DNA of 64,000 nt, from the IMG/VR virus record IMGVR_UViG_3300009177_000028, positions 124,001 through 188,000 of that record; one strand, given 5' to 3'. The translations under genes were made by a program, and so were the position numbers. The notes under the pieces are model-generated. The model was given only the letters and a program-made list of their open reading frames with translations, was not told the DNA's origin and searched no databases. Each line of letters opens with the position of its first letter. Positions within the stretch are counted from its first letter, which is position 1. Of the stretch, positions 25,413 through 41,624 are shown piece after piece.

Positions 25413-25733
25413 TTGTGCCCCATTTGCCAGCGAAAGCTAACTGCGGAAGATGAAAGGAATGAAATTACCGATTATCATTGCTTTCCTCCGCCCAACGATC
25501 ATCACTTTAGTAAGCGTATAAAGAACGATCAAGTTCAGAAGATTAAAATTCGTCTTAGCCCAGACGGCAATAAGCTATACCTCAAGATTAACTTCGATGA
25601 GGGTTACTCTCAAGTCTGGACTAGGCCCGATGATGAGTCATCTAGGATTAAGATCAATCATGTCTTTGAGCCCGACCTTAGTGACCTAAACGCCCTTCAA
25701 CAGAAGCTCCGTACCTACCTAATCTTCTCATGA
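25404..25733 (+). CDS. Zn-ribbon/FS-tag family member 7
   Basis: CPIC; ends QKLRTYLIFS. Confidence 0.8.
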   Translation: MDHLCPICQRKLTAEDERNEITDYHCFPPPNDHHFSKRIKNDQVQKIKIRLSPDGNKLYLKINFDEGYSQVWTRPDDESSRIKINHVFEPDLSDLNALQQKLRTYLIFS

Positions 25734-26086
25734 AAGCACCGACCCATTGTCCCAAATGTGGGGACGCTTTAGTTAATGATTTCTATGAACGGAAATCGCG
25801 CAATATCATAATCAAACGTTGTAAAACTCGCCCTGATCATCAATTCCAATGCGTAGTAGGTGAGAATGATACTGACATGCACAGTGCCACCGTTGCCGTT
25901 TCTGTCAATCCTTTGATTAGAGTGGCTTGGCGATTTGACGAGAAGACCTTAGCAGTAGCTAAGGGAACTATAGAAGAAATGATAAAGAGAGGGGATGATG
26001 AAGAATTTTTACCCTTCTTTATGCCAAACTTTAAAGATTATAATAAGCTAATTAAGAAACTCAGAACATATATTACTTTCTCATGA
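25730..26086 (+). CDS. Zn-ribbon/FS-tag family member 8
   Basis: CPKC; ends KKLRTYITFS. Confidence 0.8.
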   Translation: MKAPTHCPKCGDALVNDFYERKSRNIIIKRCKTRPDHQFQCVVGENDTDMHSATVAVSVNPLIRVAWRFDEKTLAVAKGTIEEMIKRGDDEEFLPFFMPNFKDYNKLIKKLRTYITFS

Positions 26087-26499
26087 CCCCTATGTTTATC
26101 TCCATGGCTTGCGGCTTCTGTCGTAAGCCTCTCGAATTTCAAGAGAGGCACTCTGGAGATACTCATTTTGATCTCTATATCTGTCGAGACTGTCAGGCCC
26201 CGAAACATCAAACCCTTTACCGACAACTATATAATAAACAAGGGTTTGTTTTATTATGTGATTATGTTAGAATTGATGAATGGTTTATTACAAGATACTA
26301 TCGCCCTACCTCTAAAGGATCCAAAAGTAACTATTCCATTATTTTTAAAGAAGCGATAGGCATCATAGATGGGTCCGTAGACATGGAGCCCATCTCTCTT
26401 AATAAGCCGGTTTGTGAGGTGGACTGTATTTTAGATTTGCCGCTTAATGATATCGAATTACTGAAGCATAAACTAAGCATTTGGACTACTTTTTCCTAA
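26083..26499 (+). CDS. Zn-ribbon/FS-tag family member 9
   Basis: CGFC; CRDC; ends HKLSIWTTFS. Confidence 0.8.
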   Translation: MTPMFISMACGFCRKPLEFQERHSGDTHFDLYICRDCQAPKHQTLYRQLYNKQGFVLLCDYVRIDEWFITRYYRPTSKGSKSNYSIIFKEAIGIIDGSVDMEPISLNKPVCEVDCILDLPLNDIELLKHKLSIWTTFS

Positions 26500-26515
26500 A
26501 TTAATTAGTGAGCGT

Positions 26516-26887
26516 TTGCGCAGGGTTATATACGAGTATATGGACGATACTCTGCACTGCCCTATTTGCGGCAATAAAATGCGCACGGTGAACATAAAGC
26601 AACTATATGAAAGAACAGGGAATTGGGCGGAACGCACCTGCAATGGAATGAATCATTCTCTGCAAGTGGTTGCCACTCCAAAAGGGAAGGTTGATTTACT
26701 TAAACTGTCACTCAATCCTAAATACTCAAAATTTTTAGAAATTGATTTTGTCAATCAAAAATGTCGCATTATCTGTATGAAAGATAGTAAGCCAGATTAT
26801 ATTGACATAGCTAAGATGATTGAGCCAGACTTTCCGGATCTGGTTAAGCTAAAGGAAAGAGTGCTGCTATATGTTACCTTCTCATGA
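26516..26887 (+). CDS. Zn-ribbon/FS-tag family member 10
   Basis: CPIC; ends ERVLLYVTFS. Confidence 0.8.
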   Translation: MRRVIYEYMDDTLHCPICGNKMRTVNIKQLYERTGNWAERTCNGMNHSLQVVATPKGKVDLLKLSLNPKYSKFLEIDFVNQKCRIICMKDSKPDYIDIAKMIEPDFPDLVKLKERVLLYVTFS

Positions 26888-27219
26888 AAACACCATGTCC
26901 ATTTTGTCGTTCTGAACTTGAAGAGTTTAAAGATAAATTCATTACCACCCATGCCTGTTATGATTCTGCCTGCATCAACGATGATATGCCAAGGTATAAG
27001 GAAATCTACGAAAACACTTCCGAGTCGTTAATAGAACGATACTTCATGATGGGCGGATACTATATCCAAGTAAGCTATAAGAACAATTGGACAGTTATTT
27101 CTAGATTAGAAGCATGTCTCCTTTTTGATTCAGTCCAAATACCTACCGCCCTTAAAGTAGATTTAACCAATCCATTAGATATTCTCAATAAAGTTAAACT
27201 TTTTATGATATTTTCATGA
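26884..27219 (+). CDS. Zn-ribbon/FS-tag family member 11
   Basis: CPFC; ends NKVKLFMIFS. Confidence 0.8.
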   Translation: MKTPCPFCRSELEEFKDKFITTHACYDSACINDDMPRYKEIYENTSESLIERYFMMGGYYIQVSYKNNWTVISRLEACLLFDSVQIPTALKVDLTNPLDILNKVKLFMIFS

Positions 27220-27581
27220 ATGATTATATATTTTGTCCATTTTGCGGAGGCGTTGAATGGATAACCGATAAATCGGGTTATGCGGGAAATGGACGATTAG
27301 AGTCTCATAAGTGTAAAGACTGTAAGAAATTTACTTATGTTAATCATTTTGAAAAAACTACTTCGCCAGGTGGACTAGAGCATTTTAGAAAAAGTAGATT
27401 CTCGATTGATGCTAGAATTGATCCTTATCAAGTAACAGTCTTTTATCATAAAGACTCAACCCAATTTAGGGACATTCACTCTGGATACGTTATTTTAGTA
27501 TTAAAGCAAGCAGTTACATTTAATTGGTATAAAAACGAAGAGCTAGTAGATAAAATTAAGAAGTATGTGGTGTTCTCGTGA
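27216..27581 (+). CDS. Zn-ribbon/FS-tag family member 12
   Basis: CPFC; CKDC; ends DKIKKYVVFS. Confidence 0.8.
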   Translation: MNDYIFCPFCGGVEWITDKSGYAGNGRLESHKCKDCKKFTYVNHFEKTTSPGGLEHFRKSRFSIDARIDPYQVTVFYHKDSTQFRDIHSGYVILVLKQAVTFNWYKNEELVDKIKKYVVFS

Positions 27582-27964
27582 TTTGGCAATATAAAGACTG
27601 TCCACTTTGTGGCTGCGAAATGAAGGTAGTACAAGGGGATCCCAACGAGCCTTTGTATCTAATGAGGTGTCCCACCCAACTAGAGCTGCCCCAAAAGACC
27701 TACTTCACCCTATCAGAAGGTGGACTTATCTTAAACGAAATCATGACTCATTTCGAACTAGAGTTTCAGAATCATAAACCAATCTATCAAGTAGTTAGAA
27801 TCTATCCATTTGCTATTAAATCTTATGATGATGTCTCTAATATTTACAGATATGATGCTAGGATGAATTCTAGATTCATTGCCGAGACTCCATATATAAA
27901 TCTCCCTTGGAACGATAAAGAAAAGATAATCAAGAAACTCTCAACCTATACAGTATTCTCATGA
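27578..27964 (+). CDS. Zn-ribbon/FS-tag family member 13
   Basis: GTG start in a GTGA overlap; CPLC; ends KKLSTYTVFS. Confidence 0.8.
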   Translation: MIWQYKDCPLCGCEMKVVQGDPNEPLYLMRCPTQLELPQKTYFTLSEGGLILNEIMTHFELEFQNHKPIYQVVRIYPFAIKSYDDVSNIYRYDARMNSRFIAETPYINLPWNDKEKIIKKLSTYTVFS

Positions 27965-28362
27965 CGCTACCCTGCCCCGTTTGCCACGAAATTATGCAAA
28001 CAACCGAAACCACTAATCTTATCATGTGCCCAAGGCGCAAGATCCATGTCCCATCTCTTAAACAAGACATAGAGACGGTTCATGCCATCTACCATTTGAA
28101 TTCAGAGAATAAGCCCATCCTAAAGGTCATCGAAGTTCTTCCATATACTTTTGAGATTCATGATAATCCTAAGGGCCTTAAACAAACCAGAATAATTAAA
28201 ACCATTAAATGGAATGACCGTAAATCATCTAGAACTACTAGGCTCAGGACAACCTCTCTGGAACGAGAGAACCTAATTACCGTTCCAGGAACAGTTAATT
28301 GCCAATGGGATGACCCCAAGCAAGTCCAAGAACGTGTCAACATGTATATGTTATTCTCATGA
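27961..28362 (+). CDS. Zn-ribbon/FS-tag family member 14
   Basis: CPVC; ends ERVNMYMLFS. Confidence 0.8.
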   Translation: MTLPCPVCHEIMQTTETTNLIMCPRRKIHVPSLKQDIETVHAIYHLNSENKPILKVIEVLPYTFEIHDNPKGLKQTRIIKTIKWNDRKSSRTTRLRTTSLERENLITVPGTVNCQWDDPKQVQERVNMYMLFS

Positions 28363-28730
28363 TATTCTCTACCGATCGTTGTCCATTATGCAACCAGAAA
28401 CTCAAATTAGAAATAATTGACGGTTCCTCGGGTAAGGTCGCCTTTCTCTACTACTGCGAGAAAAGAGAAATAACTCGTAATGAAAGCAATACAAGTTCCG
28501 TTGCAGTCCGACACTACGAGAATAGATCTTATCAAGGCGGAGAATTATCCTTTATGATTATTCCGCCTTTTGAATTGATGCATTCTCAAGCTAAGAAGTT
28601 AACTTCTGTTCGTGCGGCAAGTCCGTATCAACCCAAGAAAATTATTTTTGAAGTGCCCCTGCTTGACTTAGACTATTCCAAGACACACCTTGTAATCGAT
28701 AAAATCAAATTACTTACCCTATTCTCATGA
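28359..28730 (+). CDS. Zn-ribbon/FS-tag family member 15
   Basis: CPLC; ends DKIKLLTLFS. Confidence 0.8.
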   Translation: MIFSTDRCPLCNQKLKLEIIDGSSGKVAFLYYCEKREITRNESNTSSVAVRHYENRSYQGGELSFMIIPPFELMHSQAKKLTSVRAASPYQPKKIIFEVPLLDLDYSKTHLVIDKIKLLTLFS

Positions 28731-29074
28731 ATAATTTTGCCATCGATTTCTGCCCCCTGTGTGACAAACCCCTACGGTTACGCCGTGTCTCCAAGGTCAA
28801 TATCTATGATTGCCCCACCACTTACGAAGCCGTAACTGCCAATGGCATTAAGCAAAGAAGCCATTATGAGGTAGAGTGTGATGATGGCCAATGCATTCAA
28901 CACGTCTATGTCTTACCCTGGAGTATTGATACTTTCGACAAGTATAATAAGTCCCGAGTTCATAAACTACACAATGGGCACCGCTGGAAGTTTGTAGTAG
29001 AATTACCGCCCATTCATCCAGACAAAGAAGATAAGCTTAAAGAGAGAATTAATCTACTGGTGGCGTATCTATGA
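28727..29074 (+). CDS. Zn-ribbon/FS-tag family member 16
   Basis: CPLC; ends ERINLLVAYL. Confidence 0.8.
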   Translation: MNNFAIDFCPLCDKPLRLRRVSKVNIYDCPTTYEAVTANGIKQRSHYEVECDDGQCIQHVYVLPWSIDTFDKYNKSRVHKLHNGHRWKFVVELPPIHPDKEDKLKERINLLVAYL

Positions 29075-29475
29075 CTGAAGAACAAGAGTTTCAAAACTAC
29101 CACCTACCAAAACCATGTAAGTTTTGTTCTCAGCCGGCCGGCTATGCACCCATTGATGCGCAGTCCGAAACTAATCGTCTCTGCGTTTATTTCTGCCATA
29201 CTTGTAATGCTGAGTATGTCTATTTTAGAGATAATAAGATTATCAGTGAATCACTCTATACCGGCATTAATAATAGAGTTTATCGATATACCATTGCTTA
29301 TGGCGATATTGGGCAAATTTGGTATGTGGAAAAGCCTGGTATCCCTGGTGCAGTCGTCAACAAGGGGATGAAGTTGCTGAAGAGTTTCAACCCCGGCAAA
29401 AACTGTGATACGACTCCTATCCTAACTCCCCAAAATGTAAATGAGAAGCTAAGAACATGGCTGGTCTTTCTTTGA
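29071..29475 (+). CDS. Zn-ribbon/FS-tag family member 17
   Basis: CKFC; CHTC; ends EKLRTWLVFL. Confidence 0.8.
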   Translation: MTEEQEFQNYHLPKPCKFCSQPAGYAPIDAQSETNRLCVYFCHTCNAEYVYFRDNKIISESLYTGINNRVYRYTIAYGDIGQIWYVEKPGIPGAVVNKGMKLLKSFNPGKNCDTTPILTPQNVNEKLRTWLVFL

Positions 29476-29867
29476 GATGTCATCTTTGTAACGCCGAGCT
29501 TCGCCCCAACAATTATGCTGATTGGGAAATTAGGAATAGAAAGCAAATTACCTACGCCTGTCCTCCAAGCCATCCTCCCCATGCCGCGATTGAAATGATC
29601 CATCCAGATCTTGAGATCAATTACTATAGCTTCCTCTTCCAAATTAAAGACCAACACTATAAACTGTGTTCCCGTGGCTACTCTATTATTAGAGAAGCAG
29701 ATTTCCCCATTACAGTACTTTATAAAGTAACCGTTGCAAAACAGGGACATACAGAGCACCAGATTCTTAGGATTCCTAGATTTTATCCTCTTGAATTGGC
29801 GCAGAGTTTCAATATTCACTGCCAAACAGTTTATCAAAAAATCAAACCACTAATAGTATTCTCATGA
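29472..29867 (+). CDS. Zn-ribbon/FS-tag family member 18
   Basis: TTG start in a TTGA overlap; CHLC; ends QKIKPLIVFS. Confidence 0.75.
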   Translation: MRCHLCNAELRPNNYADWEIRNRKQITYACPPSHPPHAAIEMIHPDLEINYYSFLFQIKDQHYKLCSRGYSIIREADFPITVLYKVTVAKQGHTEHQILRIPRFYPLELAQSFNIHCQTVYQKIKPLIVFS

Positions 29868-30283
29868 AGCACTTCCAAACCAGAACCTGCCCGCTATGCA
29901 GCAAGAAGCTCAAACTGGGAGACGAAGACTCCCTCCATGACTTCTACTGCGAGGACTTCTACCTTAGAGGATACGGGATGAATGAGTTTTTCCTGCTGCT
30001 AGACGATGCCACTTCCGTCAGCAGTAGGCGCCGTACCCACATAAAGGAGCCCCATTACTCTATTGATGTAACGGAAGGAAAATACCGACAGAGCACTATT
30101 ATTCCTCCGTACTGGATTATCAGTACCGAGGAAGATAACAAGTCTCGCATCTATAAATTTGGACAAGAGATTAGCCTTCCATCAGAACAAACTCTTCTGA
30201 TGGAAGTCCCCCTAATTGTCCCCAGCGACTATCTTCCTGAACAATTCGCTAAGAAGATTAAGAACCTAGTCATCTTTACATGA
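29864..30283 (+). CDS. Zn-ribbon/FS-tag family member 19
   Basis: CPLC; ends KKIKNLVIFT. Confidence 0.8.
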   Translation: MKHFQTRTCPLCSKKLKLGDEDSLHDFYCEDFYLRGYGMNEFFLLLDDATSVSSRRRTHIKEPHYSIDVTEGKYRQSTIIPPYWIISTEEDNKSRIYKFGQEISLPSEQTLLMEVPLIVPSDYLPEQFAKKIKNLVIFT

Positions 30284-30623
30284 AGTGTCTCAGAAGCTCT
30301 TGGAGCCCTGCTATATCGAATGGCTTCTTGAGGTAGGTACCTGGTTTGAATTCCTTGTCGAGATCGGCAGAGGCACTCATAACCACGATGGGGGTAGAGT
30401 TCAGTCCCGCCTTCTTGGCGGCCACTAGAAACTCTCGTCCGCTCATGATGGACATCATCAGGTCAAGCAGGACCAAGCGGGGATGGTGGTCTTGGAGCCA
30501 GTTCAGGGCGTCTTGGCCGTTGTTGCAGGAGGCCATTTCCCACCCACTGTCCTCTAGGACAAAGCCCAGCACTTCTCGGAGGTCGAGGTCGTCATCCACA
30601 ACCAGCACTTGAGGTTTATCCAC
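30276..30623 (-). CDS. Single-domain response regulator (receiver)
   Basis: VLVVDDD; VLLDLMM (phosphoacceptor Asp); VVMSA; KKPF; GTG start just after the kinase stop. Confidence 0.9.
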   Translation of the reverse strand: MDKPQVLVVDDDLDLREVLGFVLEDSGWEMASCNNGQDALNWLQDHHPRLVLLDLMMSIMSGREFLVAAKKAGLNSTPIVVMSASADLDKEFKPGTYLKKPFDIAGLQELLRHFM

Positions 30624-30628
30624 AACTT

Positions 30629-31783
30629 CTACCTTTCTTCCAAAACGCCGCTCATGGGCAGGCACAACCTGAAAACAGACCCAGGCCCATTAGGTGGGTC
30701 GTGAATCTCGATCCGCCCGCCAAGGCTCTTGGCGGCCTCTCCGGCGAGCCAAAGGCCAATCCCCATCCCGGCGTACTGGTCACCCGAGACGGCTCGCTCG
30801 AACCTCTGGAAAATGCGCTTGCGGTCTTTCTCAGGCACACCAATGCCATAGTCCCTCACATCGACCACAACCCAGCCGTCTACATGAGCTACATTGATAT
30901 CAACAGGTTTTCCACAACCATATTTCATCGCGTTGTTGACCAGATTGGTCATAATCTGCTCAACCTTACTGACATCCCAAGTGCCGCGAATGCGCACTTT
31001 TGGCAAGTCAAGGCGAATCTCAATTCCCTGCCGTTTTGCCAAATCGTCATTCCTGAGCACAGTCTCTCGGATGACCTCACACACATCCGCATCTTGGAAC
31101 GTCACTTGCGTGGGACTGGAGCGCCGTGAGACCTCTAGCAGGTCGCGTACAAGAGCGTTGAGCTTTTGTCCAGACCTCTCCACCGCTCCCAACCTCCTCA
31201 GAATCTCTGCCCTTGACAGCTCTTCCTTTGTCAATTTCTGCACCAAGTTCTGCGATGTCAAAAGAATACTAGAGATTGGCGTTTTCAACTCATGAGCTGC
31301 CACTGAGATAAAGTCCTCTCTGATACTAATTGCCTGCTTGAGCTGCTCTCGATATTGAGATAGCTCAGTTATATCAACAAAGGAGACGATTCCTTTGCCA
31401 TCCTTCCCATGAGCTGGAGGGAGAAGCGCACCCTGACAGAGAAAGGTTCGCTTGTTGCCGGTCTCGGCGCAGGTCCAGTTAATCTCATAGGCGGTAAAGG
31501 TCTCACCTCGGGCCACCCGTCTGGAGGGGTAGTCCCTTTCGGCAATTTGACTCCCATCGTTCTCGAAAAGCCCGCCCCGCCATCTTGCCTCATAGAGGCG
31601 AAAGGCTTCCGCATTCTCTTCGATACCGGCCGGCTCCACCTCTGGAACGACGTATTTGAGCGCGGTAGCGTTCGCATACAAGATCCGTGCCGTGTCCAGC
31701 TCGACTACAATAACTGCACTGGGAAGCGTATTCAGTAGCGCTTCCATCCACTTACGATGAGCCTGCTCTTCGAGTGTTATCAT
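30629..31783 (-). CDS. PAS-domain sensor histidine kinase
   Basis: PAS-like N-terminus; H-box AAHELKTPI; N-box NLVNNAMKY; G1 DYGIGV; F-box IFQRF; G2 GMGIGL; GAGGG upstream of ATG 31783. Confidence 0.93.
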   Translation of the reverse strand: MITLEEQAHRKWMEALLNTLPSAVIVVELDTARILYANATALKYVVPEVEPAGIEENAEAFRLYEARWRGGLFENDGSQIAERDYPSRRVARGETFTAYEINWTCAETGNKRTFLCQGALLPPAHGKDGKGIVSFVDITELSQYREQLKQAISIREDFISVAAHELKTPISSILLTSQNLVQKLTKEELSRAEILRRLGAVERSGQKLNALVRDLLEVSRRSSPTQVTFQDADVCEVIRETVLRNDDLAKRQGIEIRLDLPKVRIRGTWDVSKVEQIMTNLVNNAMKYGCGKPVDINVAHVDGWVVVDVRDYGIGVPEKDRKRIFQRFERAVSGDQYAGMGIGLWLAGEAAKSLGGRIEIHDPPNGPGSVFRLCLPMSGVLEER

Positions 31784-31915
31784 GCGGTACCCCTCAGAGA
31801 CTGTATGACCATGTCTCAGCAAGACGCAAGCACAATCGCCCAGCAAAAATCATGCCATGTTGCCTTTTGCCCCACCTGTGGTTAATTTTCCATCAGGAAC
31901 TGGAATCTGAATTTT

Positions 31916-32329
31916 ATGAACTGCCCACTCTGCCAAACACCGCTTTCTATTGATGCTAGCGATGTGTATAAAGATCATCCAACTTATAAATGTCCCATTC
32001 AAGTTAGTGGAGACGAATATACTCATTCCACTCATTACATCAAATACTTTTCGGCAGATTGGACCTACTCCCATTACAGAGAAGAGGCTGTCCTCCCACC
32101 CTACCGATTGATTAATTATTATAATTTTCGACAGGGCAAGAGTGATTACTCTGCTATCCAGGAGTATAAGTTTGTCAAGCATGCCCTCCAAAAGAATGGT
32201 CAGGTCAAGCGCTTCCCTTGCTTCGACCGATATAAGTTTCAAACGTTGATGCGCTTCGATCAATGCCTCTCCATCCCAGATAGTGAACACTTCGTCAATC
32301 GAATCAAAACCCTCTTGGTCTTCTCATGA
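31916..32329 (+). CDS. Zn-ribbon/FS-tag family member 20
   Basis: CPLC; ends NRIKTLLVFS. Confidence 0.8.
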   Translation: MNCPLCQTPLSIDASDVYKDHPTYKCPIQVSGDEYTHSTHYIKYFSADWTYSHYREEAVLPPYRLINYYNFRQGKSDYSAIQEYKFVKHALQKNGQVKRFPCFDRYKFQTLMRFDQCLSIPDSEHFVNRIKTLLVFS

Positions 32330-32685
32330 GAACTTGTCCATTATGTAATAAAACTCTAATTAAGCAATCGGCCCAAGATGCTTGTGGGTACCAAGAGGAT
32401 TGGTATTGTCCCGATGAGCTTCGTTTGGCCTCGGGACGTAAAGTCAATCACTATCGAGAATATCCTGAATTAGGATACACCGATATATACTTACCGCCCT
32501 ACCGCATCCGCAATCAAGATGGTCAATCCAAAATTGGTTATCTCTCCCAGTACAAAACTAAACGAAGAGTTCGTACTACTAGAGGGAAATACTATTTCAA
32601 AACCATCATCACCTGCCCACAACTCCACCCAGATACCGAAGAGAAACTTCTTAATAGAGTTAAACTCCTCCTATTAATATCATGA
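32326..32685 (+). CDS. Zn-ribbon/FS-tag family member 21
   Basis: CPLC; ends NRVKLLLLIS. Confidence 0.8.
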   Translation: MRTCPLCNKTLIKQSAQDACGYQEDWYCPDELRLASGRKVNHYREYPELGYTDIYLPPYRIRNQDGQSKIGYLSQYKTKRRVRTTRGKYYFKTIITCPQLHPDTEEKLLNRVKLLLLIS

Positions 32686-33062
32686 TGAATGGATTCAATC
32701 AATATCTTTGCGACTTTTGCCAGCAACCTTGCAGACGATCCACTGGAGCTAAAGAGTATGGGAAACATGCCCGATGGCAACGCTGCCTCTCATGCAAAGT
32801 CTCCTACGCCATTAGCCTAACAGGGCAAGTCAAATGCCGAATCTTTCGAGGCCCTGGAGAGGATGAATTCTATCAACTTAGAATCAATTACAAAGAGAAT
32901 ATTTCTACCATCTGCTTCCTTAAAAAGGATAGTTGGATGTATAACAACCGCAAACAAACTACTTATAACTCAACCCAAATAGTTACCTTGGATCATTGCA
33001 TTAAAGATATCTCGCCCCAAAATGTCCAAGATAAAATCAAATTGTATATTCTATTCTCATGA
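32682..33062 (+). CDS. Zn-ribbon/FS-tag family member 22
   Basis: CDFC; CLSC; ends DKIKLYILFS. Confidence 0.8.
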   Translation: MMNGFNQYLCDFCQQPCRRSTGAKEYGKHARWQRCLSCKVSYAISLTGQVKCRIFRGPGEDEFYQLRINYKENISTICFLKKDSWMYNNRKQTTYNSTQIVTLDHCIKDISPQNVQDKIKLYILFS

Positions 33063-33421
33063 TTAAATGTCATTTCTGCCAACGAACTTGCCGTAAGGTG
33101 GTTCCCAATCAAAAAGAATTTGATCGCACTCCCTACTGGCGCTGCGATTATCATGGCTCAACCGTTGTTAGACAATATTACATCTCCGTTCAAGCGGAAC
33201 CACTTTGCCTATCTCATATTGGTTTGATTACCTATTATAAAGATCTTCAATATGGAGCCTATCTTTTCTTTGATGAAGCTCACTTCCCCCATAAATTTAG
33301 AATCGATAAGATTAATCCATATCCACGGACCACTCAAACCGTTATGACCCTGGACTTCCATCCAGATATCACACCGGAAAATGTCCAGCAGAAACTCCCG
33401 ACCTATATTATGTTCTCATGA
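33059..33421 (+). CDS. Zn-ribbon/FS-tag family member 23
   Basis: CHFC; CDYH; ends QKLPTYIMFS. Confidence 0.8.
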   Translation: MIKCHFCQRTCRKVVPNQKEFDRTPYWRCDYHGSTVVRQYYISVQAEPLCLSHIGLITYYKDLQYGAYLFFDEAHFPHKFRIDKINPYPRTTQTVMTLDFHPDITPENVQQKLPTYIMFS

Positions 33422-33756
33422 ATTACTATTGCCTCTTCTGCGATCAACGATGCAAGAAAACTCACCCGGAAGCCTCCTGGTGGAAATGCAGGCCATGCAA
33501 GGTCTCCTTCCATGATGATGACAATGGCCTTTGGAAAATTTCTTTCTCCGTCAACAAACCAGATGCCCTTTATACCTTGGACTTGCTCCTCAATGAAAAT
33601 AAAACCGAGCTGTATGTCCTGGGCAGAGATCCCGTTCCCTCCATTATCGATTCCATTATGAATGGAAAGCTAACCATCTCCCTCCCCTCCATTATGCAAA
33701 ATGTTAATCCCAATAACGTGGCGGATAAAGTAAAAACATTATTGGTCTTCTCCTGA
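33418..33756 (+). CDS. Zn-ribbon/FS-tag family member 24
   Basis: CLFC; CRPC; ends DKVKTLLVFS. Confidence 0.8.
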   Translation: MNYYCLFCDQRCKKTHPEASWWKCRPCKVSFHDDDNGLWKISFSVNKPDALYTLDLLLNENKTELYVLGRDPVPSIIDSIMNGKLTISLPSIMQNVNPNNVADKVKTLLVFS

Positions 33757-33802
33757 AATTTGCCACGACACAAAGTTTCATTCGATCCGCCCCATTTCGC
33801 GC

Positions 33803-34165
33803 ATGCACCTCAAAACCATTAGCTGCCAACAACGCTGGAGATACTACTGCCCCTTCTGCGACCAAGATATCACCCCGCCCGATGGCTACACCATCAGCAG
33901 CTTCATCCAATGCCAATTCTGCCCCGTCACCACCAACTTGATCGTCAATGGCTCCATTTCCAATCCCAATATCGCCTATATCCAATTCCAGCAAGACCAG
34001 TTCATGATCGAACTCAATCAGGATGACCAAACCACGGCCCTCTTTGCCGGTCCCGTCAATGCTAGGCTTTCCCAAATGCTCAAGCTAAGCTACCTGGTCC
34101 CCGTCAATCCAAACAATTTCCACAATTGGCTAAGCAAGCTGCTCAACCTAAAAGCTTTCTCTTAA
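33803..34165 (+). CDS. Zn-ribbon/FS-tag family member 25
   Basis: CPFC; CQFC; ends SKLLNLKAFS. Confidence 0.75.
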   Translation: MHLKTISCQQRWRYYCPFCDQDITPPDGYTISSFIQCQFCPVTTNLIVNGSISNPNIAYIQFQQDQFMIELNQDDQTTALFAGPVNARLSQMLKLSYLVPVNPNNFHNWLSKLLNLKAFS

Positions 34166-34806
34166 GGCTCTCGATTATAAACCGAATCCCCATAAATGCA
34201 ATAATTCAAATTGCCCATCGGTAAATGCTGATAAACCGCCACTCGCCTCAATGCCTCATAATCCACGCACCTGGCCTCCGCCCAATTAAACATCGGCTGC
34301 ATCAAATAGACATCATCATGCTGCGCTCCCAGCAAATGTCCCATCTCATGCAAAGCAATCCCCGTCACCCACTGATTGTACATGCGGTCGCGAATCATCC
34401 ACATGCGGTTGCCGCCAATCTCATTGGCCCAAGCTAATGTATACGACTTGCCATGCTTGGTCTTGTCTAACTCCGTTACCATGGAATTGCTGCTGTCCGT
34501 CTTCATGACCAACCAGCAATTGCCCAATAAACATTGCTTGATAATCTCCGGCTCCATATCAAATCGATAATTAACAACCCGCAACTTAACATACCCGTTC
34601 AAGGCGTAATTCCATTGAGTAATCGCATCGTCAATGGCAAGCTTATCCGCCTCTCCAAAGTTCTTATCCATGTAAATGGAAATAACCTTCAACGGAACGG
34701 GTGAATATCCACCCGCGTTAATATAATGAAACGGCTCCAGCCCTCGATGAGCAAAACATCCAACCGCTAAATACACTGCTAGTAAGATTACTAAAAGTCG
34801 TTTCAT
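34162..34806 (-). CDS. Matrixin-like (metzincin) zinc metalloprotease, probable lipoprotein
   Basis: HEMGHLLGAQH (HExxHxxGxxH) followed by Met-turn YLMQP; signal MKRLLVILLAVYLAVGC. Confidence 0.88.
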   Translation of the reverse strand: MKRLLVILLAVYLAVGCFAHRGLEPFHYINAGGYSPVPLKVISIYMDKNFGEADKLAIDDAITQWNYALNGYVKLRVVNYRFDMEPEIIKQCLLGNCWLVMKTDSSNSMVTELDKTKHGKSYTLAWANEIGGNRMWMIRDRMYNQWVTGIALHEMGHLLGAQHDDVYLMQPMFNWAEARCVDYEALRRVAVYQHLPMGNLNYCIYGDSVYNREP

Positions 34807-34818
34807 AAACCATCTCCC

Positions 34819-35583
34819 TTACTTCTTAGATAAATCAGGAGCTGGCTCGTGATACTCTTTCACCATCTTCTTAACTGAATCCAAATGAACATAATAGTTC
34901 ATAAATGGAACTCTAGTTAACCTGGAACAAATTCCAACTAGGTTTCCAGAGCTATCAAAAACTCCACCACCAGAATTGCCAAACCAAATAGTTGCATTAA
35001 CCTGAACTACCTTGCCAATTCCTGAACTCTCGTCTCCACGATAAGCAGAAACAGTTCCCTCAGCATGCGTGTAATACATTCCCTTAGGATGTCCGACAGA
35101 ATAAACATGCTCTCCCAATGCTGGCATCTCGCTGGCAAATCCAACTGCCTCGTGCTCTGGTAATCCACCAACGTCTGCTTTAATCAATGCCAAATCATGA
35201 TCCGCATCAAAGGCAACTACCTTGGCCTTGTGAATAGCAGCAGGATCATCCATCACTTCCTTGACTTCCTTGCTAGTTACATAGTAAGTCTTCTCTCCAA
35301 CTGGATCCGCTCCCTCTTCACGAGCTACACAGTGTCCTGCCGTAACAATCTCGTCTTGGCTAATCCAAACTCCTGTGCAGTGCGGACGAATATCCACGCT
35401 GGCATTATCAATCTCCCCATTCTCATCCTTGTGAAGAGTGACCTTAAAATGAACTAAAGCTACCGTGCTCTCTCCAATATGCGCATGTAACGCATCTGGA
35501 CTCTTCACCGGTGTCTTAAGTGATGAACCACAACCTACTAAGCCTAACACCATCGCTAGTGTAATTACCAATAAACGTTTCAT
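34819..35583 (-). CDS. Trypsin-like (S1) serine protease, probable lipoprotein
   Basis: TAGHC; DHDLALIK; GNSGGGV (His-Asp-Ser triad); signal MKRLLVITLAMVLGLVGC. Confidence 0.9.
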   Translation of the reverse strand: MKRLLVITLAMVLGLVGCGSSLKTPVKSPDALHAHIGESTVALVHFKVTLHKDENGEIDNASVDIRPHCTGVWISQDEIVTAGHCVAREEGADPVGEKTYYVTSKEVKEVMDDPAAIHKAKVVAFDADHDLALIKADVGGLPEHEAVGFASEMPALGEHVYSVGHPKGMYYTHAEGTVSAYRGDESSGIGKVVQVNATIWFGNSGGGVFDSSGNLVGICSRLTRVPFMNYYVHLDSVKKMVKEYHEPAPDLSKK

Positions 35584-35696
35584 GCAGTACGTCCTAAATT
35601 TTCAAAAGACTCCCCAATCGAAGCCCAATTAAGAAAAATACCAGATTATCCCCAATTGTTTCCAATATTTCACAAAACTAAGACAGATGTAATTTA

Positions 35697-36239
35697 TTAG
35701 ATTATAGATTGAATCACTTGGTGTAAACAACCCACTGCCTTGGTTCCCCTAATAATAATCCCGGCATGGTAATCATAATCCCCTTGGTCATTGTAATCAT
35801 GCCAGCATTCCAATAACTCCCCTGCCCCCATTACCCTGTACATCCCAGCCACGGATGGATCCATTAAATAAACTAATCCATTCTTAATTCCTACCAAAAC
35901 TACATAGTGCCCATCATCCCAAACCTCAGACATCTTAGTCTCTGCCGTATAACTACCCCACGCCTGAATACTCAAGATAACCGTATATCCCTCAGCCGTT
36001 AATCCCTGTAACTCCTCCAGAGTCATATTAGATTTACTGTAGGCAGTTAATCCATAGTTCCTAGCCCCTGCTATCAATCCTTCCCCTGAGGTTCCTTCAT
36101 CGGTGGTCCCCAGTAAATCGTATAGCTCTGGCTCTCGGCCATCCCAAACGCCCCAATAGTATAAACAACTGGCTAAACTAGCTGCCCCACAACTGTAGTC
36201 ATAGGCTTGGCGGACTATAGGTAAATAGATTAAGCTCAT
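35697..36239 (-). CDS. Peptidase C39-like cysteine protease
   Basis: Q..DYSCGAASLA; GHYVVLVG; YLMDPS. Confidence 0.85.
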   Translation of the reverse strand: MSLIYLPIVRQAYDYSCGAASLASCLYYWGVWDGREPELYDLLGTTDEGTSGEGLIAGARNYGLTAYSKSNMTLEELQGLTAEGYTVILSIQAWGSYTAETKMSEVWDDGHYVVLVGIKNGLVYLMDPSVAGMYRVMGAGELLECWHDYNDQGDYDYHAGIIIRGTKAVGCLHQVIQSII

Positions 36240-36630
36240 TTAGATTACTTCCTTTGAGTGGTTGGGGCGCGGTTAGCGCCCTCTCTTATGCCAGTCTATC
36301 CCGTTAGGTATGGGGTGATTATATCTGTATTGCTACATAGGGTCACATATGGCAACGTATGGTCATATATGGTCATTAATTAGATCTTTTATAATGGTAT
36401 AAGATGCTTATTACTTTTAATAAGTGGGAAATGGTGGGATGGGGTGGCATTTTATGGGAAAGTAATATATATTTTATCGTATTGGTCGTTTTGGTAATGT
36501 ATATGTTAGTTGGAGATGGCCCACAGGCTGTGTGATTTGGTGTTTGACCCCTGTTTGGGAGGCGCCATCCCACCCCGCACGACAGTCTCCCACCTTTTTC
36601 GGGCGGCTCCAATGTAGGTGGTATGAGTTA

Positions 36631-36806
36631 TGCAATATGCAATCATGCCAACTACATCGTAATCAATGTAGGATAATCTCTTTTATTTATCTATACTGTG
36701 TGATGAATACTTTTTATTATTATCATTCATCACATGTAGTATATTTTTATTTATTAGAGGAATGTGGTTGGTATGCCGTTTGCAATATGCAATCATGCCA
36801 ACTACA
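36631..36806 (-). repeat. Two identical 26-bp direct repeats (36631-36656, 36781-36806) flanking an AT-rich tract; each holds the 22-bp motif on the minus strand
   Basis: tgcaatatgcaatcatgccaactaca occurs twice, 150 bp apart. Confidence 0.9.
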
Positions 36807-36846
36807 GGTAGGATAAGCAGCAGAAAGCCCCTGAAACCTGGGCGGT

Positions 36847-36862
36847 TGGCATGAAACCTGCA
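36847..36862 (+). promoter_or_regulatory. Candidate sigma54 (-24/-12) promoter
   Basis: TGGCATG-aaac-CTGCA fits TGGCACG-N4-TTGC spacing. Confidence 0.4.
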
Positions 36863-36880
36863 ATTAGCAAGCGTGCCAAC
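36859..36880 (-). promoter_or_regulatory. 22-bp motif copy (GTTGGCACGCTTGCTAATTGCA)
   Basis: Reverse complement matches the repeated consensus. Confidence 0.65.
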
Positions 36881-36947
36881 TACCTGGGCGGGGCGAGTAG
36901 GAGGTCCACCTACCCCAAGCGGGCGCCTCTCTCGTGTGTCGAGCATG

Positions 36948-37031
36948 CCGCGCAACGGCCGATCGTGGCGCGCTAGTGGCGCGGTAGCGCAAGGATCGGC
37001 CGCTAGTGGCGCGGTACCGCGCAACGGCCGA
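36948..37031. repeat. Nested GC-rich direct repeats
   Basis: ccgcgcaacggccga at 36948 and 37017; cgctagtggcgcggta at 36971 and 37001. Confidence 0.85.
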
Positions 37032-37303
37032 AAGCGCACTAGAAGAGCGCCTAGCGCGACCCTAGCCTATGACACCAAGATCATACCCCGGATGTAGTCA
37101 AAGGTCATGAGCTGTCGTTCAATGTTGCTCGAAAAAGGCTAATGGTTTCGTAGGGTAGACCTACATTATCCGCCAAAACTTTCGGAATTCGTCATGGTAG
37201 TTTCTTTTCCTACATCGCAATTAGTTGCTGAATTCCGACCAACCAGGACACAAAGATCATTGTGGGATAAGATGCTACACCAATGATATCATATAGTTAC
37301 AGT

Positions 37304-37319
37304 TGGCACCGACCCTGCA
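37304..37319 (+). promoter_or_regulatory. Candidate sigma54 promoter upstream of the early gene run
   Basis: TGGCACC-gacc-CTGCA with canonical GG/GC spacing. Confidence 0.45.
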
Positions 37320-37419
37320 ATGACCCCTAGACGCAACGGGAACGGATGAGAGCAGGGGTCACGCGGGCGGATCGCCCGCGCAGCCTGACAGCGCACATGG
37401 TGCGCGCTGTCGCTCGATG

Positions 37420-37432
37420 TGGTCTTTGACAA
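37420..37432 (+). promoter_or_regulatory. boxA-like antitermination sequence
   Basis: tggtctttgacaa resembles rrn boxA (TGCTCTTTAACAA); preceded by GC-rich hairpins at 37362-37380 and 37388-37411. Confidence 0.35.
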
Positions 37433-37964
37433 TCTAAACGTCTCACACGGGCGCCTCATGTGCGCCTACAGCGCGCGCCTAGCGCGTGTGCCTCCTACCT
37501 ACGGTAAGGGACAGTGTGCGATAGCGGCGACCATATAGGTCCGCTCCTACCGCGTCCCACAATCACCGAGTAGCGCACACAACCGAAGCCACTGTGGGTT
37601 ACATGCGGAAGATGTGTGGGCCAGGTGACCCGTCCTACATTCACTCCACACGGGAGACGATGTAGGCTACCCTCACCTAGTGTACGAATCCCGAGGAGGG
37701 ATAAACCGTAGGTAGGGCAATGTCCTGCTAGAGCCGACAATGTAGGCCGCGGTGAGGCGGTATGAGTCCGCAGCGTACGAATCAAGAGACTAAACGACTA
37801 TGTGGGAGGGACGCCTAGAGTGTCCTTCCCCCGTAGCGTAAAGCCTACAAGGTAAGTAACTCTCTCCAAGTCTACGGTATTGGAGTAGGAGAGAACACCT
37901 TGTGAGCTTTACGCTGCGATCATCGCAGAGTGTCCCACAACAGCAGACAACAGGAGCCAACATC

Positions 37965-39921: not shown

Positions 39922-39961
39922 CCACACCCTGCTCCTAAGTAATCCTTGGGGGCAGAAGTGG
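39922..39961 (+). repeat. Conserved intergenic stem-loop copy 4 (covarying CCAC/GTGG)
   Basis: CCAC-ACC-CTGCTCCTAAG...CTTGGGGGCAG-AA-GTGG. Confidence 0.8.
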
Positions 39962-39982
39962 TTGGCACGCTTGCATATAGCA
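39961..39982 (+). promoter_or_regulatory. 22-bp motif copy
   Basis: GTTGGCACGCTTGCATATAGCA. Confidence 0.7.
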
Positions 39983-40007
39983 CAACGTATGCCAAAGGAG
40001 GATTCCC

Positions 40008-40532
40008 ATGAAGATCAAGAGCCAGCGCACCACGACCTACACCGAGACCTACTCCCTCACCTTCGAGTACATCGGCTCCAATGGGAGCGGGTGTGCGTTC
40101 GACTGCGACAAGGAGGGAAAGGTCGACCTGACCAAGCTGCACCCGTGTGCGATTCTGACCTACACCGAAGCCAAGTTCGGACAGGTCACCCGACGTGAGA
40201 ACGTGCAGTACCGTGTGGGTGCAGATGGGGAATACGAGCCCATCCCCGGCACGGGTGAGATGGTCACCCGAGAGGTGAGCAAGGGTGAGGTCATCACCTA
40301 CATCAACCGCCAGATCGTTCCTGCGGTGGGAGAGTGTGATTGTTGTGGGAGGGATGTCCACCTCTACGGTTTCACCAACACATGTGAGTGTGGGGCCGAC
40401 TACAACATGTCGGGTCAGATGCTCGCTCCTCGTGAACAGTGGGGAGAGGAGACAGGTGAGACAGCCGCCGACATCCTCTCCTTCGACTCCTACGATCGGG
40501 AGCCCATGGGCACCGATGAAGGATGGTTCTGA
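40008..40532 (+). CDS. Early hypothetical protein with Cys clusters
   Basis: AGGAGG RBS; CDCC and CECG. Confidence 0.75.
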   Translation: MKIKSQRTTTYTETYSLTFEYIGSNGSGCAFDCDKEGKVDLTKLHPCAILTYTEAKFGQVTRRENVQYRVGADGEYEPIPGTGEMVTREVSKGEVITYINRQIVPAVGECDCCGRDVHLYGFTNTCECGADYNMSGQMLAPREQWGEETGETAADILSFDSYDREPMGTDEGWF

Positions 40533-40548
40533 CAAAGTAGGAGTGCCG

Positions 40549-40590
40549 CCTACACCCTGCCTTCATGTGCAAGCATGAGGGTAGAAGTAG
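40549..40590 (+). repeat. Conserved intergenic stem-loop copy 5
   Basis: CTAC-ACC-CTGCCTTCATG...CATGAGGGTAG-AA-GTAG. Confidence 0.8.
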
Positions 40591-40611
40591 TTGGCATGCT
40601 TGCATGTAGCA
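40590..40611 (+). promoter_or_regulatory. 22-bp motif copy
   Basis: GTTGGCATGCTTGCATGTAGCA. Confidence 0.7.
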
Positions 40612-40656
40612 GATTGTATGCCAATCGACCCCAAACACCCAAGGTAGGAGAGTGTC

Positions 40657-41217
40657 ATGAACTTCACGACCAAACCGGATACGTTCGTTCTCGTGGTGGC
40701 GGCCCTGTCGGATAAGCTGGTCCAGAAGGAGAACGAGTGTGTGGAGCTGCGAGACCACATCGCCTCCGACCATGCCAGCATGGACGACATGCAGCGCACC
40801 ATCACCGACCTGCGGGTCCAGTGTGAGCGACTGCAAGACAAGGCGGATGATGTGGACTACTTCCGCACTCGCTATCAGGACATGTCCCACAAGCTGGAGA
40901 ACTACGAACACCTCCGCTCACAGAATGCCGAACTGTGGGAGCAGGTGCGAGTCCTGAAGATGGAGAACCACAAGCTCCGCTACGGTGGGCAGACTCCCGA
41001 GGAGACGGCCAACAACTACATGCTCTCCCAGGGGAGGCAGGTGTGGGAGCGTGGCAACAAGATTCAGTGCATCAAGGAGGTGCGAGAGGTGAGTGGATGG
41101 GGGCTGAAGGAAACCAAGGATTGGTGCGAAGCCTACATCGCCCGCCTGGATAACGAAAAGGAGGAGAGCGGCCCCGGTACCAAGCGCTCCTCCGGCAACG
41201 TAGCCAAAACTGGCTGA
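40657..41217 (+). CDS. Coiled-coil protein with ribosomal L7/L12 C-terminal-like domain
   Basis: GNKIQCIKEVREVSGWGLKETKDWCE resembles the bL12 CTD pattern K+.VIK.VR..TGLGLKEAKDLVE. Confidence 0.65.
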   Translation: MNFTTKPDTFVLVVAALSDKLVQKENECVELRDHIASDHASMDDMQRTITDLRVQCERLQDKADDVDYFRTRYQDMSHKLENYEHLRSQNAELWEQVRVLKMENHKLRYGGQTPEETANNYMLSQGRQVWERGNKIQCIKEVREVSGWGLKETKDWCEAYIARLDNEKEESGPGTKRSSGNVAKTG

Positions 41218-41221
41218 CGCA

Positions 41222-41263
41222 CCTACACCCTGCCTCTATGTGTGAACATGGGGGCAGGAGTAG
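41222..41263 (+). repeat. Conserved intergenic stem-loop copy 6
   Basis: CTAC-ACC-CTGCCTCTATG...CATGGGGGCAG-GA-GTAG. Confidence 0.8.
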
Positions 41264-41298
41264 CTGATTCAGACACAACACATGAAAGGAGAGAGGTC

Positions 41299-41424
41299 AT
41301 GAAGGTTCACAAGTCGCAGCGTGTGTTCCAAGAGGAGAAGAAGTATCCGGGTGTGGGTGCCCTCATCTGCGTCGGCTCTGGTCTCCTCTTTTGGGGGAGC
41401 TTGGCCTACCTCTTCGTTCACTGA
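41299..41424 (+). CDS. Small single-TM protein
   Basis: GAGG RBS; C-terminal hydrophobic helix. Confidence 0.5.
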   Translation: MKVHKSQRVFQEEKKYPGVGALICVGSGLLFWGSLAYLFVH

Positions 41425-41444
41425 GGGAGTAGTGGGTCCAAGGG

Positions 41445-41466
41445 GTTGGCATGCTTGCATAGTGCA
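41445..41466 (+). promoter_or_regulatory. 22-bp motif copy
   Basis: GTTGGCATGCTTGCATAGTGCA. Confidence 0.7.
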
Positions 41467-41624
41467 ACATCCATGCCACAGCAGGCATGTCGCCCCTACA
41501 CCTACCTCAGAATACCTTCACCTATAATTCTTGTTGCACCTAACTTGAAACGTGCTAACTTATAATCTCGCCATTCTCGCAAGCCAAGGCCAAAACCTAC
41601 ATCGGCCCCATTAGGAGATAAGTC

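What the first reader, a model, noticed from the sequence alone, without database searches (positions are those of the whole stretch)
34162..36239. Three proteases of three catalytic classes in one operon abutting the tag array
Seen: a C39-like cysteine peptidase, an S1 serine protease and a metzincin, all with intact catalytic residues. The last two have near-identical lipoprotein signals (MKRLLVI...VGC), and the FGE lipoprotein starts MKRL too. The metzincin shares a TTAA stop overlap with the last array gene. Inference: surface-anchored proteases could destroy receptors (superinfection exclusion) or remodel the myxobacterial extracellular matrix. The C39 enzyme might process leaders or array products.
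Basis: partly seen in the sequence, partly recalled or inferred. Interest (0 to 1): 0.6.

Follow-up and report, generated by a model that had tools for sequence, protein, structure and literature searches.

The report
Huge-phage membrane-anchored protease cassette
A giant soil phage carries three intact protease genes in a row, and two of them (a serine protease and a small zinc protease, both lipid-anchored outside the cytoplasm) form a pair conserved across related 400-500 kb phages, most likely to cut host envelope proteins during infection.

Summary
On the minus strand lie a signal-less C39 cysteine peptidase (36239..35697), a Trypsin_2 serine protease (35583..34819) and a metzincin (34806..34162). 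All catalytic residues are intact, and the TTAA stop overlap with the last array gene is real.

The window belongs to a 204 kb fragment of an uncultivated huge phage from soil, rhizosphere and groundwater. A myxobacterial host is not supported.

- **Conserved core:** the serine protease and metzincin pair. Both keep an invariant lipobox cysteine and a conserved cysteine pair, and they are adjacent in 12 of 14 distinct loci, down to about 30% identity.
- **Position:** in 13 of 14 loci the pair converges on an array of about 20 small zinc-ribbon genes. It always sits at a sharp GC boundary.
- **C39 gene:** accessory, found in only 5-6 loci and absent from two near-complete genomes. It lacks the signal peptide that its bacterial relatives carry, so it acts in a different compartment from the other two.
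- **Array link:** frequent but not obligate. One complete genome has the pair with no detectable array.

My best reading is an extracytoplasmic protease pair that cleaves host envelope proteins, for exclusion or receptor removal. A lysis-helper role is the main rival. The function is inferred, not shown. I found no published description.

The parts
35697..36239 (-). Standalone C39 cysteine peptidase, 180 aa, with no signal peptide (cytoplasmic). Catalytic residues are Q11, C17, H111 and D127. It is an accessory member of the cassette.
   Evidence: - Pfam PF03412 and PF13529 are above their cut-offs.
- Orthologue alignment is A3.
- An in-frame TAA lies directly before the ATG.
- It is present in only 5-6 of 14 loci.
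- Bacterial homologues at 42-48% identity all carry signal peptides.
34819..35583 (-). S1 serine protease lipoprotein, 254 aa, with an HtrA-like protease domain and no PDZ domain. Lipobox Cys is C18, the triad is H84/D130/S204, and C69 and C85 are a conserved cysteine pair.
   Evidence: - Trypsin_2 scores 90.3 bits.
- NCBIfam matches DegP, DegS and HtrA over the protease domain only, far below their cut-offs.
- All listed residues are invariant in 9 orthologues.
34162..34806 (-). Minimal metzincin lipoprotein, 214 aa. Lipobox Cys is C17. It has an HExxHxxGxxHD zinc site, a Met-turn at M169, and conserved C180 and C203. It is the constant member of the cassette.
   Evidence: - There are 87 homologue clusters; the alignment is A1.
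- The AF2 model has pLDDT 91.5, and Foldseek matches karilysin, MMPs and snapalysin.
- The PDB profile search matches only the zinc motif and Met-turn.
- No homologue has Asp at position +2 after the lipobox Cys (0 of 75 scored).
34162..34165 (.). TTAA, where the convergent stop codons of the metzincin gene and the last array gene overlap.
   Evidence: - Read directly from the sequence.
- Relatives show similar 4-18 nt convergent overlaps: L002, L003, L008, L009.
35584..35696 (-). The 113-nt spacer between C39 and S1. The spacer between S1 and the metzincin (34807-34818) is only 12 nt. Each gene has its own Shine-Dalgarno sequence.
   Evidence: - Sequence read.
- No terminator-like site was found here; a weak sigma-70-like match lies at 35673..35645, within chance expectation.
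36240..37901 (-). A 1.66 kb non-coding control region upstream of the cassette. It holds three copies of a quasi-palindromic motif of about 40 nt (36611-36884) that point toward the cassette, plus a sigma-70-like site at 36346..36318. It also marks the GC boundary.
   Evidence: - Repeats.
- Six further motif copies on the plus strand lie ahead of rightward genes.
- Variant copies sit in the same position in L002 and L009.
- Promoter scan was not above chance.
- GC jump.
25730..34165 (+). Convergent array of 18 paralogous genes of about 110-140 aa. Each has an N-terminal CxxC...C zinc ribbon and a C-terminal tail that mostly ends in FS. A related 211-aa gene lies at 24055-24690. The array is interrupted by a minus-strand histidine kinase and response regulator at 30276-31846.
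   Evidence: - Translations and alignment A5.
- The same array lies next to the cassette in 13 of 14 loci.
- In whole records, nearly all array genes sit beside the cassette.

Best explanation
The serine protease and the metzincin are a conserved pair of active, lipid-anchored proteases. A clade of 400-500 kb soil phages makes them in the infected cell.

Proposed steps:
1. Both are exported through Sec.
2. Both are lipidated at the lipobox cysteine. Because none has Asp at position +2, in a Gram-negative host they would most likely go to the outer membrane.
3. Both are stabilised by a disulphide bond.
4. There they cleave host envelope proteins. I think the most likely purpose is to strip or inactivate receptors and other surface or periplasmic machinery. 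That would exclude superinfecting phages and stop progeny from sticking to infected cells or debris.

The C39 peptidase is a separate, optional addition found in one sub-clade. It derives from exported bacterial C39 peptidases, has lost its signal peptide and therefore acts in the cytoplasm on an unknown target.

Shown: family membership, intact catalytic residues, conserved lipoboxes and cysteine pairs, the conserved pairing and its position.

Inferred: export and lipidation, outer-membrane destination, substrates, timing and purpose.

The confidence given (0.4) is for the whole statement including the exclusion purpose. That the pair are active, exported, anchored proteases kept together by selection I hold at about 0.85.
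For: - **Families and catalytic residues:**
- **Export signals:** the lipobox Cys is invariant in both families. Cysteine pairs are conserved (S1 C69/C85; metzincin C180/C203), which fits an oxidising compartment. Asp at +2 occurs in 0 of 75 homologues.
- **Pairing:** S1 lies immediately upstream of the metzincin in 12 of 14 distinct loci at 30-98% identity. S1 is single-copy and adjacent in whole records.
- **Integrity in nature:** near-identical strains in soil and groundwater runs from other studies show no indels inside the three genes.
- **Shared upstream motif:** three motif copies upstream of the cassette match six copies ahead of the divergent block of small genes, which includes an ArdC-like anti-restriction gene. 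This hints at co-regulation with host-takeover genes rather than with virion or lysis genes.
- **Precedent (from my own knowledge):** phage outer-membrane lipoproteins that block receptors, such as T5 Llp, Cor and Ltp. Papers on Ltp and Cor were listed.
Against: - There is no expression or timing data, no substrate, and no direct evidence of lipidation.
- The host is unknown, so the outer-membrane inference is conditional.
- The motif's function is unresolved. It may not be a promoter, so the co-regulation argument is weak.
- The only experimentally studied phage-associated metzincin (Listeria Mtz/Tim, PMC8235301) promotes lysis, not exclusion.
- Known exclusion lipoproteins are not proteases.
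Confidence: 0.4

Rival explanations
1. Lysis or egress helper. Late in infection, the two anchored proteases cut proteins that tether or stabilise the envelope (for example links between the outer membrane and peptidoglycan). This would sensitise the cell to the endolysin and speed virion release.
For: - The closest studied case is a phage-derived secreted metzincin with a lipoprotein partner in Listeria. It sensitises cells to phage-mediated lysis and enhances virion release (PMC8235301).
- Proteases anchored to the outer membrane and facing the periplasm are well placed to cut tethers.
- No Phage_lysozyme, SLT or Amidase_2 gene was found in the 204 kb fragment, so the lysis genes are unlocated.
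Against: - No holin, endolysin or spanin gene lies next to the cassette in any of the 14 loci.
- The neighbours are small unknown genes typical of host-takeover regions.
- The contig is only 48% complete, so the absence of lysis genes says little.
Confidence: 0.25
2. Functional coupling with the array. The proteases (or C39 specifically) process, activate or degrade the zinc-ribbon array proteins, or recognise their shared C-terminal tail.
For: - The cassette abuts the array in 13 of 14 loci, often with overlapping convergent stop codons.
- In L011 and L013 the metzincin is kept next to the array even though S1 is lost.
- In whole records nearly all array genes lie beside the cassette.
Against: - Array proteins have no signal peptide and need zinc-ribbon cysteines in reduced form. 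They are therefore cytoplasmic, while S1 and the metzincin are exported.
- C39, the only cytoplasmic protease, is missing from most loci.
- Array proteins have no conserved Gly-Gly site.
- One complete genome (G009) has S1 and the metzincin with no array match.
- Convergent overlapping ends suggest the two units are not co-transcribed.
Confidence: 0.1
3. Other envelope or extracellular roles. Candidates are degrading extracellular or matrix proteins for nutrients, attacking neighbouring competitor cells, or destroying a periplasmic or outer-membrane defence component.
For: - The two exported proteases have different specificities.
- The phage also encodes further lipoproteins, including an FGE-sulfatase-domain one.
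- Huge phages are reported to encode many envelope-associated proteins (bioRxiv 10.64898/2026.10.24.761521).
Against: - There is no specific evidence for any of these roles.
- Lipid anchoring argues against a freely diffusing extracellular enzyme.
- The myxobacterial matrix idea has no host support.
Confidence: 0.12

Closest known systems
Karilysin and the matrix metalloproteinase catalytic domain (MEROPS M10A); snapalysin (M7)
   Same: - The zinc motif has the form HExxHxxGxxH, followed by an MMP-like Met-turn.
- The five-strand, three-helix metzincin fold is shared (Foldseek E 2.8e-7, TM 0.55 by query and 0.71 by target).
- It has the size of a single catalytic domain.
   Different: - Sequence similarity is limited to about 30 residues around the zinc site.
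- It scores below the Pfam M10 cut-off.
- It has no cysteine-switch prodomain.
- It is lipid-anchored through an N-terminal lipobox.
- It has two family-specific conserved cysteines.
- It is encoded by huge phages.
Listeria phage-derived Mtz/Tim pair (secreted metzincin plus TIMP-like lipoprotein), PMC8235301
   Same: - It is a phage-associated exported metzincin encoded next to a lipoprotein partner.
- It acts on the bacterial envelope.
   Different: - The partner here is a serine protease, not a TIMP-like inhibitor.
- Here both proteins are lipoproteins.
- No sequence relationship was tested or seen.
- The Listeria pair sits under a CI/Cro switch in a Gram-positive chromosome.
HtrA/DegP/DegS family serine proteases (S1C)
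   Same: - The protease domain matches Do, DegS and HtrA models over residues 105-220.
- The H/D/S triad and GNSGG motif are shared.
- Both are extracytoplasmic.
   Different: - There is no PDZ domain.
- Scores are far below the family cut-offs (57 bits against 416).
- It is lipid-anchored and only 254 aa long.
Double-glycine (C39) peptidase domains of bacteriocin ABC exporters, and standalone exported C39 peptidases (FapD, FilB, PA2778 family)
   Same: - It has the C39 fold signature with Gln, Cys, His and Asp. Q11 and C17 are at the same numbers as I recall for the ComA peptidase domain (from memory).
- Pfam scores are above cut-off.
   Different: - It is not fused to a transporter, and no ABC exporter or double-glycine leader was found nearby.
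- Unlike its closest bacterial homologues, it lacks a signal peptide.
Phage superinfection-exclusion lipoproteins (T5 Llp, Cor, Ltp)
   Same: All are phage-encoded lipoproteins placed in the host envelope during infection. This is a functional analogy only.
   Different: - Those proteins bind and block receptors or DNA entry and are not enzymes.
- No homology was detected (no Pfam or PHROG hit of that kind).

Membership tests
Peptidase C39 (Pfam PF03412 / clan CA) | Profile match above the curated cut-off | tested here: met
   PF03412 scores 49.1 bits against 22, and PF13529 scores 43.4 against 24.
Peptidase C39 (Pfam PF03412 / clan CA) | Catalytic Cys and His with Asp, plus an oxyanion Gln | tested here: met
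   Q11, C17, H111 and D127. H111 and D127 are invariant in all six orthologues. Q11 and C17 are kept in the five full-length ones; L010 lacks the N-terminus.
Peptidase C39 (Pfam PF03412 / clan CA) | N-terminal domain of an ABC exporter with a cognate double-glycine leader peptide | tested here: not met
   The protein is a standalone 180 aa domain. No transporter lies in the locus, and no double-glycine leader ORF exists in the 204 kb contig. The genome is only 48% complete.
Chymotrypsin-fold serine protease (S1; Pfam Trypsin_2) | Profile match above cut-off and a His-Asp-Ser triad in that order | tested here: met
   PF13365 scores 90.3 bits against 27.6. H84, D130 and S204 are invariant in 9 orthologues.
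HtrA/DegP subfamily (S1C) | One or two C-terminal PDZ domains | tested here: not met
   No PDZ hit was found. NCBIfam matches cover the protease domain only and fall far below the cut-offs.
Metzincin clan | HExxHxxGxxH/D zinc motif | tested here: met
   The motif is HEMGHLLGAQHD. Within it, E154, G156, H157 and G160 are invariant in A1, and H153 and H163 are kept in at least 90% of sequences. The motif is present in 86 of 87 homologues.
Metzincin clan | Met-turn below the zinc site | tested here: met
   YLMQP lies 5 residues after the third His. It aligns with the ALMYP Met-turn of karilysin.
Metzincin clan | Metzincin catalytic-domain fold | tested here: met
   The AF2 model has pLDDT 91.5. 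Foldseek top hits are karilysin, MMP-12, -13 and -14 and snapalysin, with E down to 2.8e-7.
Matrixin (M10A, Pfam PF00413) | Profile match above cut-off; cysteine-switch propeptide | tested here: not met
   PF00413 scores 20.1 bits against 24. No prodomain lies between the lipobox and the catalytic domain.
Bacterial lipoprotein (S1 and metzincin) | Signal peptide ending in a lipobox [LVI][ASTVI][GAS]C | tested here: met
   The lipoboxes are LVGC (S1) and AVGC (metzincin). The Cys is invariant in A1 and A2. A strict pattern finds a lipobox in 75 of 87 metzincin homologues, and several of the rest have one by eye.
Bacterial lipoprotein (S1 and metzincin) | Actual lipidation and signal peptidase II cleavage | not testable with these tools
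   This needs expression with globomycin or palmitate labelling.
Operon (single transcript C39-S1-metzincin) | Co-transcription | not testable with these tools
   No RNA run holds the phage. The shared strand and the 113 and 12 nt gaps are only compatible with co-transcription.

The most novel reading that the evidence does not exclude
A clade of 400-500 kb soil phages uses a dedicated two-enzyme 'envelope shaving' module: an HtrA-like serine protease and a mini-MMP, both lipid-anchored. It proteolytically removes host receptors or envelope machinery. This would be the first protease-based superinfection exclusion or receptor-destruction system in phages. In one sub-clade a signal-less C39 peptidase adds a cytoplasmic Gly-Gly-directed cleavage activity against an unknown host or phage target.
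Probability: 0.25. Interest if true: 0.7.

Novelty: new variant of a known kind. Interest (0 to 1): 0.5.

Why it matters
Huge phages carry many genes for the host envelope, but their roles are largely unknown. A conserved pair of anchored proteases gives a concrete, testable way in which such phages could remodel the host surface. It also defines a new, compact, lipid-anchored metzincin family with 87 sequence clusters, none of them in cultured phages.

The two genes are small and have clear catalytic residues. They can therefore be expressed and mutated in laboratory strains without culturing the phage. The fixed position of the cassette, at a sharp GC boundary and next to a large paralogue array, may also help to map how these genomes are organised.

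Tried and rejected
- **Complex prediction of C39 with an array protein (33418-33756):** no answer. The score was 0.00 and controls were not run. It is not evidence either way.
- **Double-glycine leader ORFs in the 204 kb contig:** none found.
- **GenBank phages:** no DNA match for the locus and no protein match for the metzincin. S1 gave only remote hits of about 30%.
- **PHROGs:** nothing for C39 or the metzincin.
- **Rfam over 25-40 kb:** only one sub-threshold chance hit.
- **Host inference:**
  - Bacterial metzincin relatives are single chromosomal genes in high-GC Alphaproteobacteria MAGs, with no S1 or array.
  - The histidine kinase inside the array matches five MAGs only at a generic 25-36%.
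  - The host stays unknown.
- **Endolysin families PF00959, PF01464, PF01510 in the contig:** none found. This is uninformative at 48% completeness.
- **Exact motif in relatives:** no matches at up to 5 mismatches. Only diverged variants turned up by repeat finding.
- **Sigma-54 promoter reading of the motif:** rejected for now. The GG-N10-GC spacing appears only on the strand that points away from the genes.
- **Array protein fold:** no convincing PDB match (Foldseek best E 0.3; VIA best Z 5.3). The language-model lead to the RPA C-terminal OB fold (0.89) was not confirmed.
- **Literature:** three full-text searches found no description of this cassette.
- **Not used or not met:** the large representative-protein search was not used, as the operators advised. 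No alternative genetic code was needed.
Full report
**What the window is.** The window is bases 124001-188000 of a 204,387-base linear IMG/VR virus record that CheckV rates 48% complete. Relatives that carry the same locus are 394-481 kb records rated 92-100% complete. This is therefore a fragment of a huge phage.

Sequence near-identical to the locus occurs in rhizosphere, soil and groundwater metagenomes. Nineteen DNA runs from 13 studies hold it; one of these runs may be the source sample. No RNA run holds it. GenBank phages contain nothing similar.

- **C39 (36239..35697, 180 aa).**
  - It passes the Pfam cut-offs for Peptidase_C39 and C39_2.
  - It has Q11, C17, H111 and D127, kept in its full-length orthologues.
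  - An in-frame TAA directly precedes its ATG. None of the phage orthologues has a hydrophobic N-terminus. The protein is therefore cytoplasmic.
- **S1 (35583..34819, 254 aa).**
  - It is a clear Trypsin_2 protein at 90 bits.
  - Across nine orthologues the following are invariant: H84, D130, S204, lipobox Cys18 and the cysteine pair C69/C85.
  - It resembles the HtrA/DegP protease domain but has no PDZ domain.
- **Metzincin (34806..34162, 214 aa).**
  - It falls below every Pfam cut-off. It still has the full HExxHxxGxxHD motif and a Met-turn.
  - A profile of 24 family members matches karilysin, MMP-14 and fragilysin only across that segment.
  - Its AlphaFold2 model (pLDDT 91.5) matches karilysin, MMP and snapalysin catalytic domains.
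  - Lipobox Cys17, C180 and C203 are invariant.
  - The zinc motif is present in 86 of 87 homologue clusters. No homologue has Asp at +2 after the lipobox Cys.

The remaining details also hold.
- The TTAA stop overlap with the last array gene is real.
- The two signal peptides share their first seven residues and the VGC ending. They are only 35/54 identical at the DNA level.
- The FGE-sulfatase-domain lipoprotein beginning MKRL exists at 18612-19451.

**Conservation.** I collected 14 distinct loci from ENA, JGI, Logan and IMG/VR that encode a true metzincin homologue and mapped their genes.

| Feature | Loci with it | Notes |
|---|---|---|
| S1 immediately upstream of the metzincin | 12 of 14 | The other two (L011, L013) carry two tandem metzincins instead |
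| C39 | window, L002, L003-5, L008, L009 | N-terminally truncated ORF in L010 |
| Convergent zinc-ribbon array next to the metzincin | 13 of 14 | Often with overlapping stop codons |

Whole-record searches sharpen this picture.

| Record | Size and completeness | S1 | Metzincin | C39 | Array |
|---|---|---|---|---|---|
| G010 | 481 kb, 100% | yes | yes | yes | 21 genes, nearly all beside the cassette |
| G009 | 473 kb, 100% | yes | yes | no | no detectable match |
| G008 | 394 kb, 92% | no | two copies | no | 13 weak matches |

The metzincin is therefore the constant element and S1 is its usual partner. C39 is optional. The link to the array is strong but not obligate.

Natural variants from three other studies show substitutions inside the three genes but no indels.

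**Origins.**
- Cellular relatives of the metzincin (33-35% identity) are single genes with ordinary signal peptides in high-GC Alphaproteobacteria MAGs. They have no S1 or array nearby.
- The C39 family is larger. About 180-aa signal-less forms sit on huge-phage contigs.
- Forms of 210-250 aa occur in Bdellovibrionales, Competibacteraceae, Polyangia and Elusimicrobia MAGs at 42-48% identity. All carry signal peptides and sit in unrelated contexts.
- The phage thus appears to have taken an exported bacterial enzyme and kept it in the cytoplasm.

**Regulatory setting.**
- Upstream of C39 is a 1.66 kb non-coding stretch. It holds three copies of a quasi-palindromic motif of about 40 nt that point toward the cassette.
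- Six more copies, in the same orientation relative to their downstream genes, precede rightward genes at 39957-47536 and beyond. That block includes an ArdC-like anti-restriction gene.
- Diverged copies occupy the same places in L002 and L009.
- Both arms of the motif are conserved in sequence, with no compensatory change by eye. I therefore favour a protein-binding DNA site over an RNA hairpin. Its function is not established.
- The same non-coding stretch marks a jump from about 40% to about 55% GC. That jump recurs at the cassette in 11 of 12 relatives.

**Mechanism.** What is shown: a conserved pair of intact proteases with conserved lipoboxes and cysteine pairs. What I infer from general lipoprotein biology: both are exported and lipid-anchored, and in a Gram-negative host they are sorted to the outer membrane.

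Their neighbours are small unknown genes, not virion or lysis genes. The upstream motif is shared with a block that contains an anti-restriction homologue. I therefore favour an infection-time role in cutting host envelope proteins, most likely receptor removal or exclusion.

The main rival is a lysis-helper role. It is supported by the one studied phage-associated metzincin, the Listeria Mtz/Tim pair (PMC8235301).

A direct enzymatic link to the array is unlikely.
- The array proteins look cytoplasmic.
- The only cytoplasmic protease, C39, is often absent.
- No double-glycine site or leader was found.
- The complex prediction gave no answer.

**Novelty.** All three proteins belong to known protease clans, and phage envelope lipoproteins are known. 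What is new:
- a distinct lipid-anchored mini-metzincin family restricted to uncultured huge phages;
- its conserved pairing with an HtrA-like lipoprotein;
- its fixed position between a large paralogue array and a compositional boundary.

Three full-text literature searches found no description of it. A 2026 preprint on envelope proteins of huge phages does not mention lipoproteins, metzincins or trypsin-like proteases.

**Limits.** I have no host, no expression data and no biochemistry. The function is an inference.

Noticed in passing
window 36240-37901 (boundary); whole record: The genome has two compositional parts. It is about 40% GC up to the cassette and 50-55% GC after it. The same 13-20 point jump sits at the cassette in 11 of 12 related phages. 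The plus-strand GC skew also turns from strongly negative to positive here.
   Followed up: partly
window 36611-36884 (minus strand); 39957, 40586, 41441, 43319, 47511 (plus strand); genome 192795: A quasi-palindromic motif of about 40 nt (GTTGGCATG...TTGCA...ATGCCA) occurs nine times. Each copy points toward the downstream gene. Diverged copies sit in the same positions in L002 and L009. On the reverse strand each copy has sigma-54-like GG-N10-GC spacing, but that direction faces away from the genes. Its function is unresolved.
   Followed up: partly
window 25730-34165 and 24055-24690: The array proteins give a confident AlphaFold2 model (pLDDT 91) with no convincing PDB fold match. A weak language-model lead points to the zinc-containing RPA C-terminal OB fold. 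There are 20 or more copies per genome, almost all in one locus.
   Followed up: partly
window 30276-31846 (minus strand): A PAS histidine kinase and a response regulator, at 51% GC, sit inside the array on the opposite strand. They are absent from the arrays of relatives, so this looks like a recent insertion. Matches to bacterial genomes are only generic, at about 30%.
   Followed up: partly
window 18612-19451, 45809-46363, 60366-60674: Three further predicted lipoproteins. The first has an FGE-sulfatase domain. The other two have no family match.
   Followed up: partly
window 23016-24113, 9255-10307, 41625-42518, 40657-41217: The phage encodes a class-I release factor, an IMPDH/GMP-reductase family enzyme and an ArdC-like protein with a zincin domain. 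It also encodes a coiled-coil protein with a ribosomal L7/L12 C-terminal-like segment. The release factor and the ArdC-like gene keep their positions in relatives.
   Followed up: no
L023 6551-7033: In one distant relative an SprT-like zinc protease gene follows the metzincin on the same strand. That cassette therefore has a different third protease.
   Followed up: no
L025, L026 and proteins P0183-P0196: Bacterial homologues of the phage C39 all carry signal peptides and are orphan genes in unrelated contexts. The phage forms begin directly at the catalytic domain.
   Followed up: yes
window 33519-33521 and 36274, 36990-36996: Strain variants from other studies differ by a 3-nt insertion inside one array gene and by small indels in the non-coding region. 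None differs by an indel inside the protease genes.
   Followed up: partly
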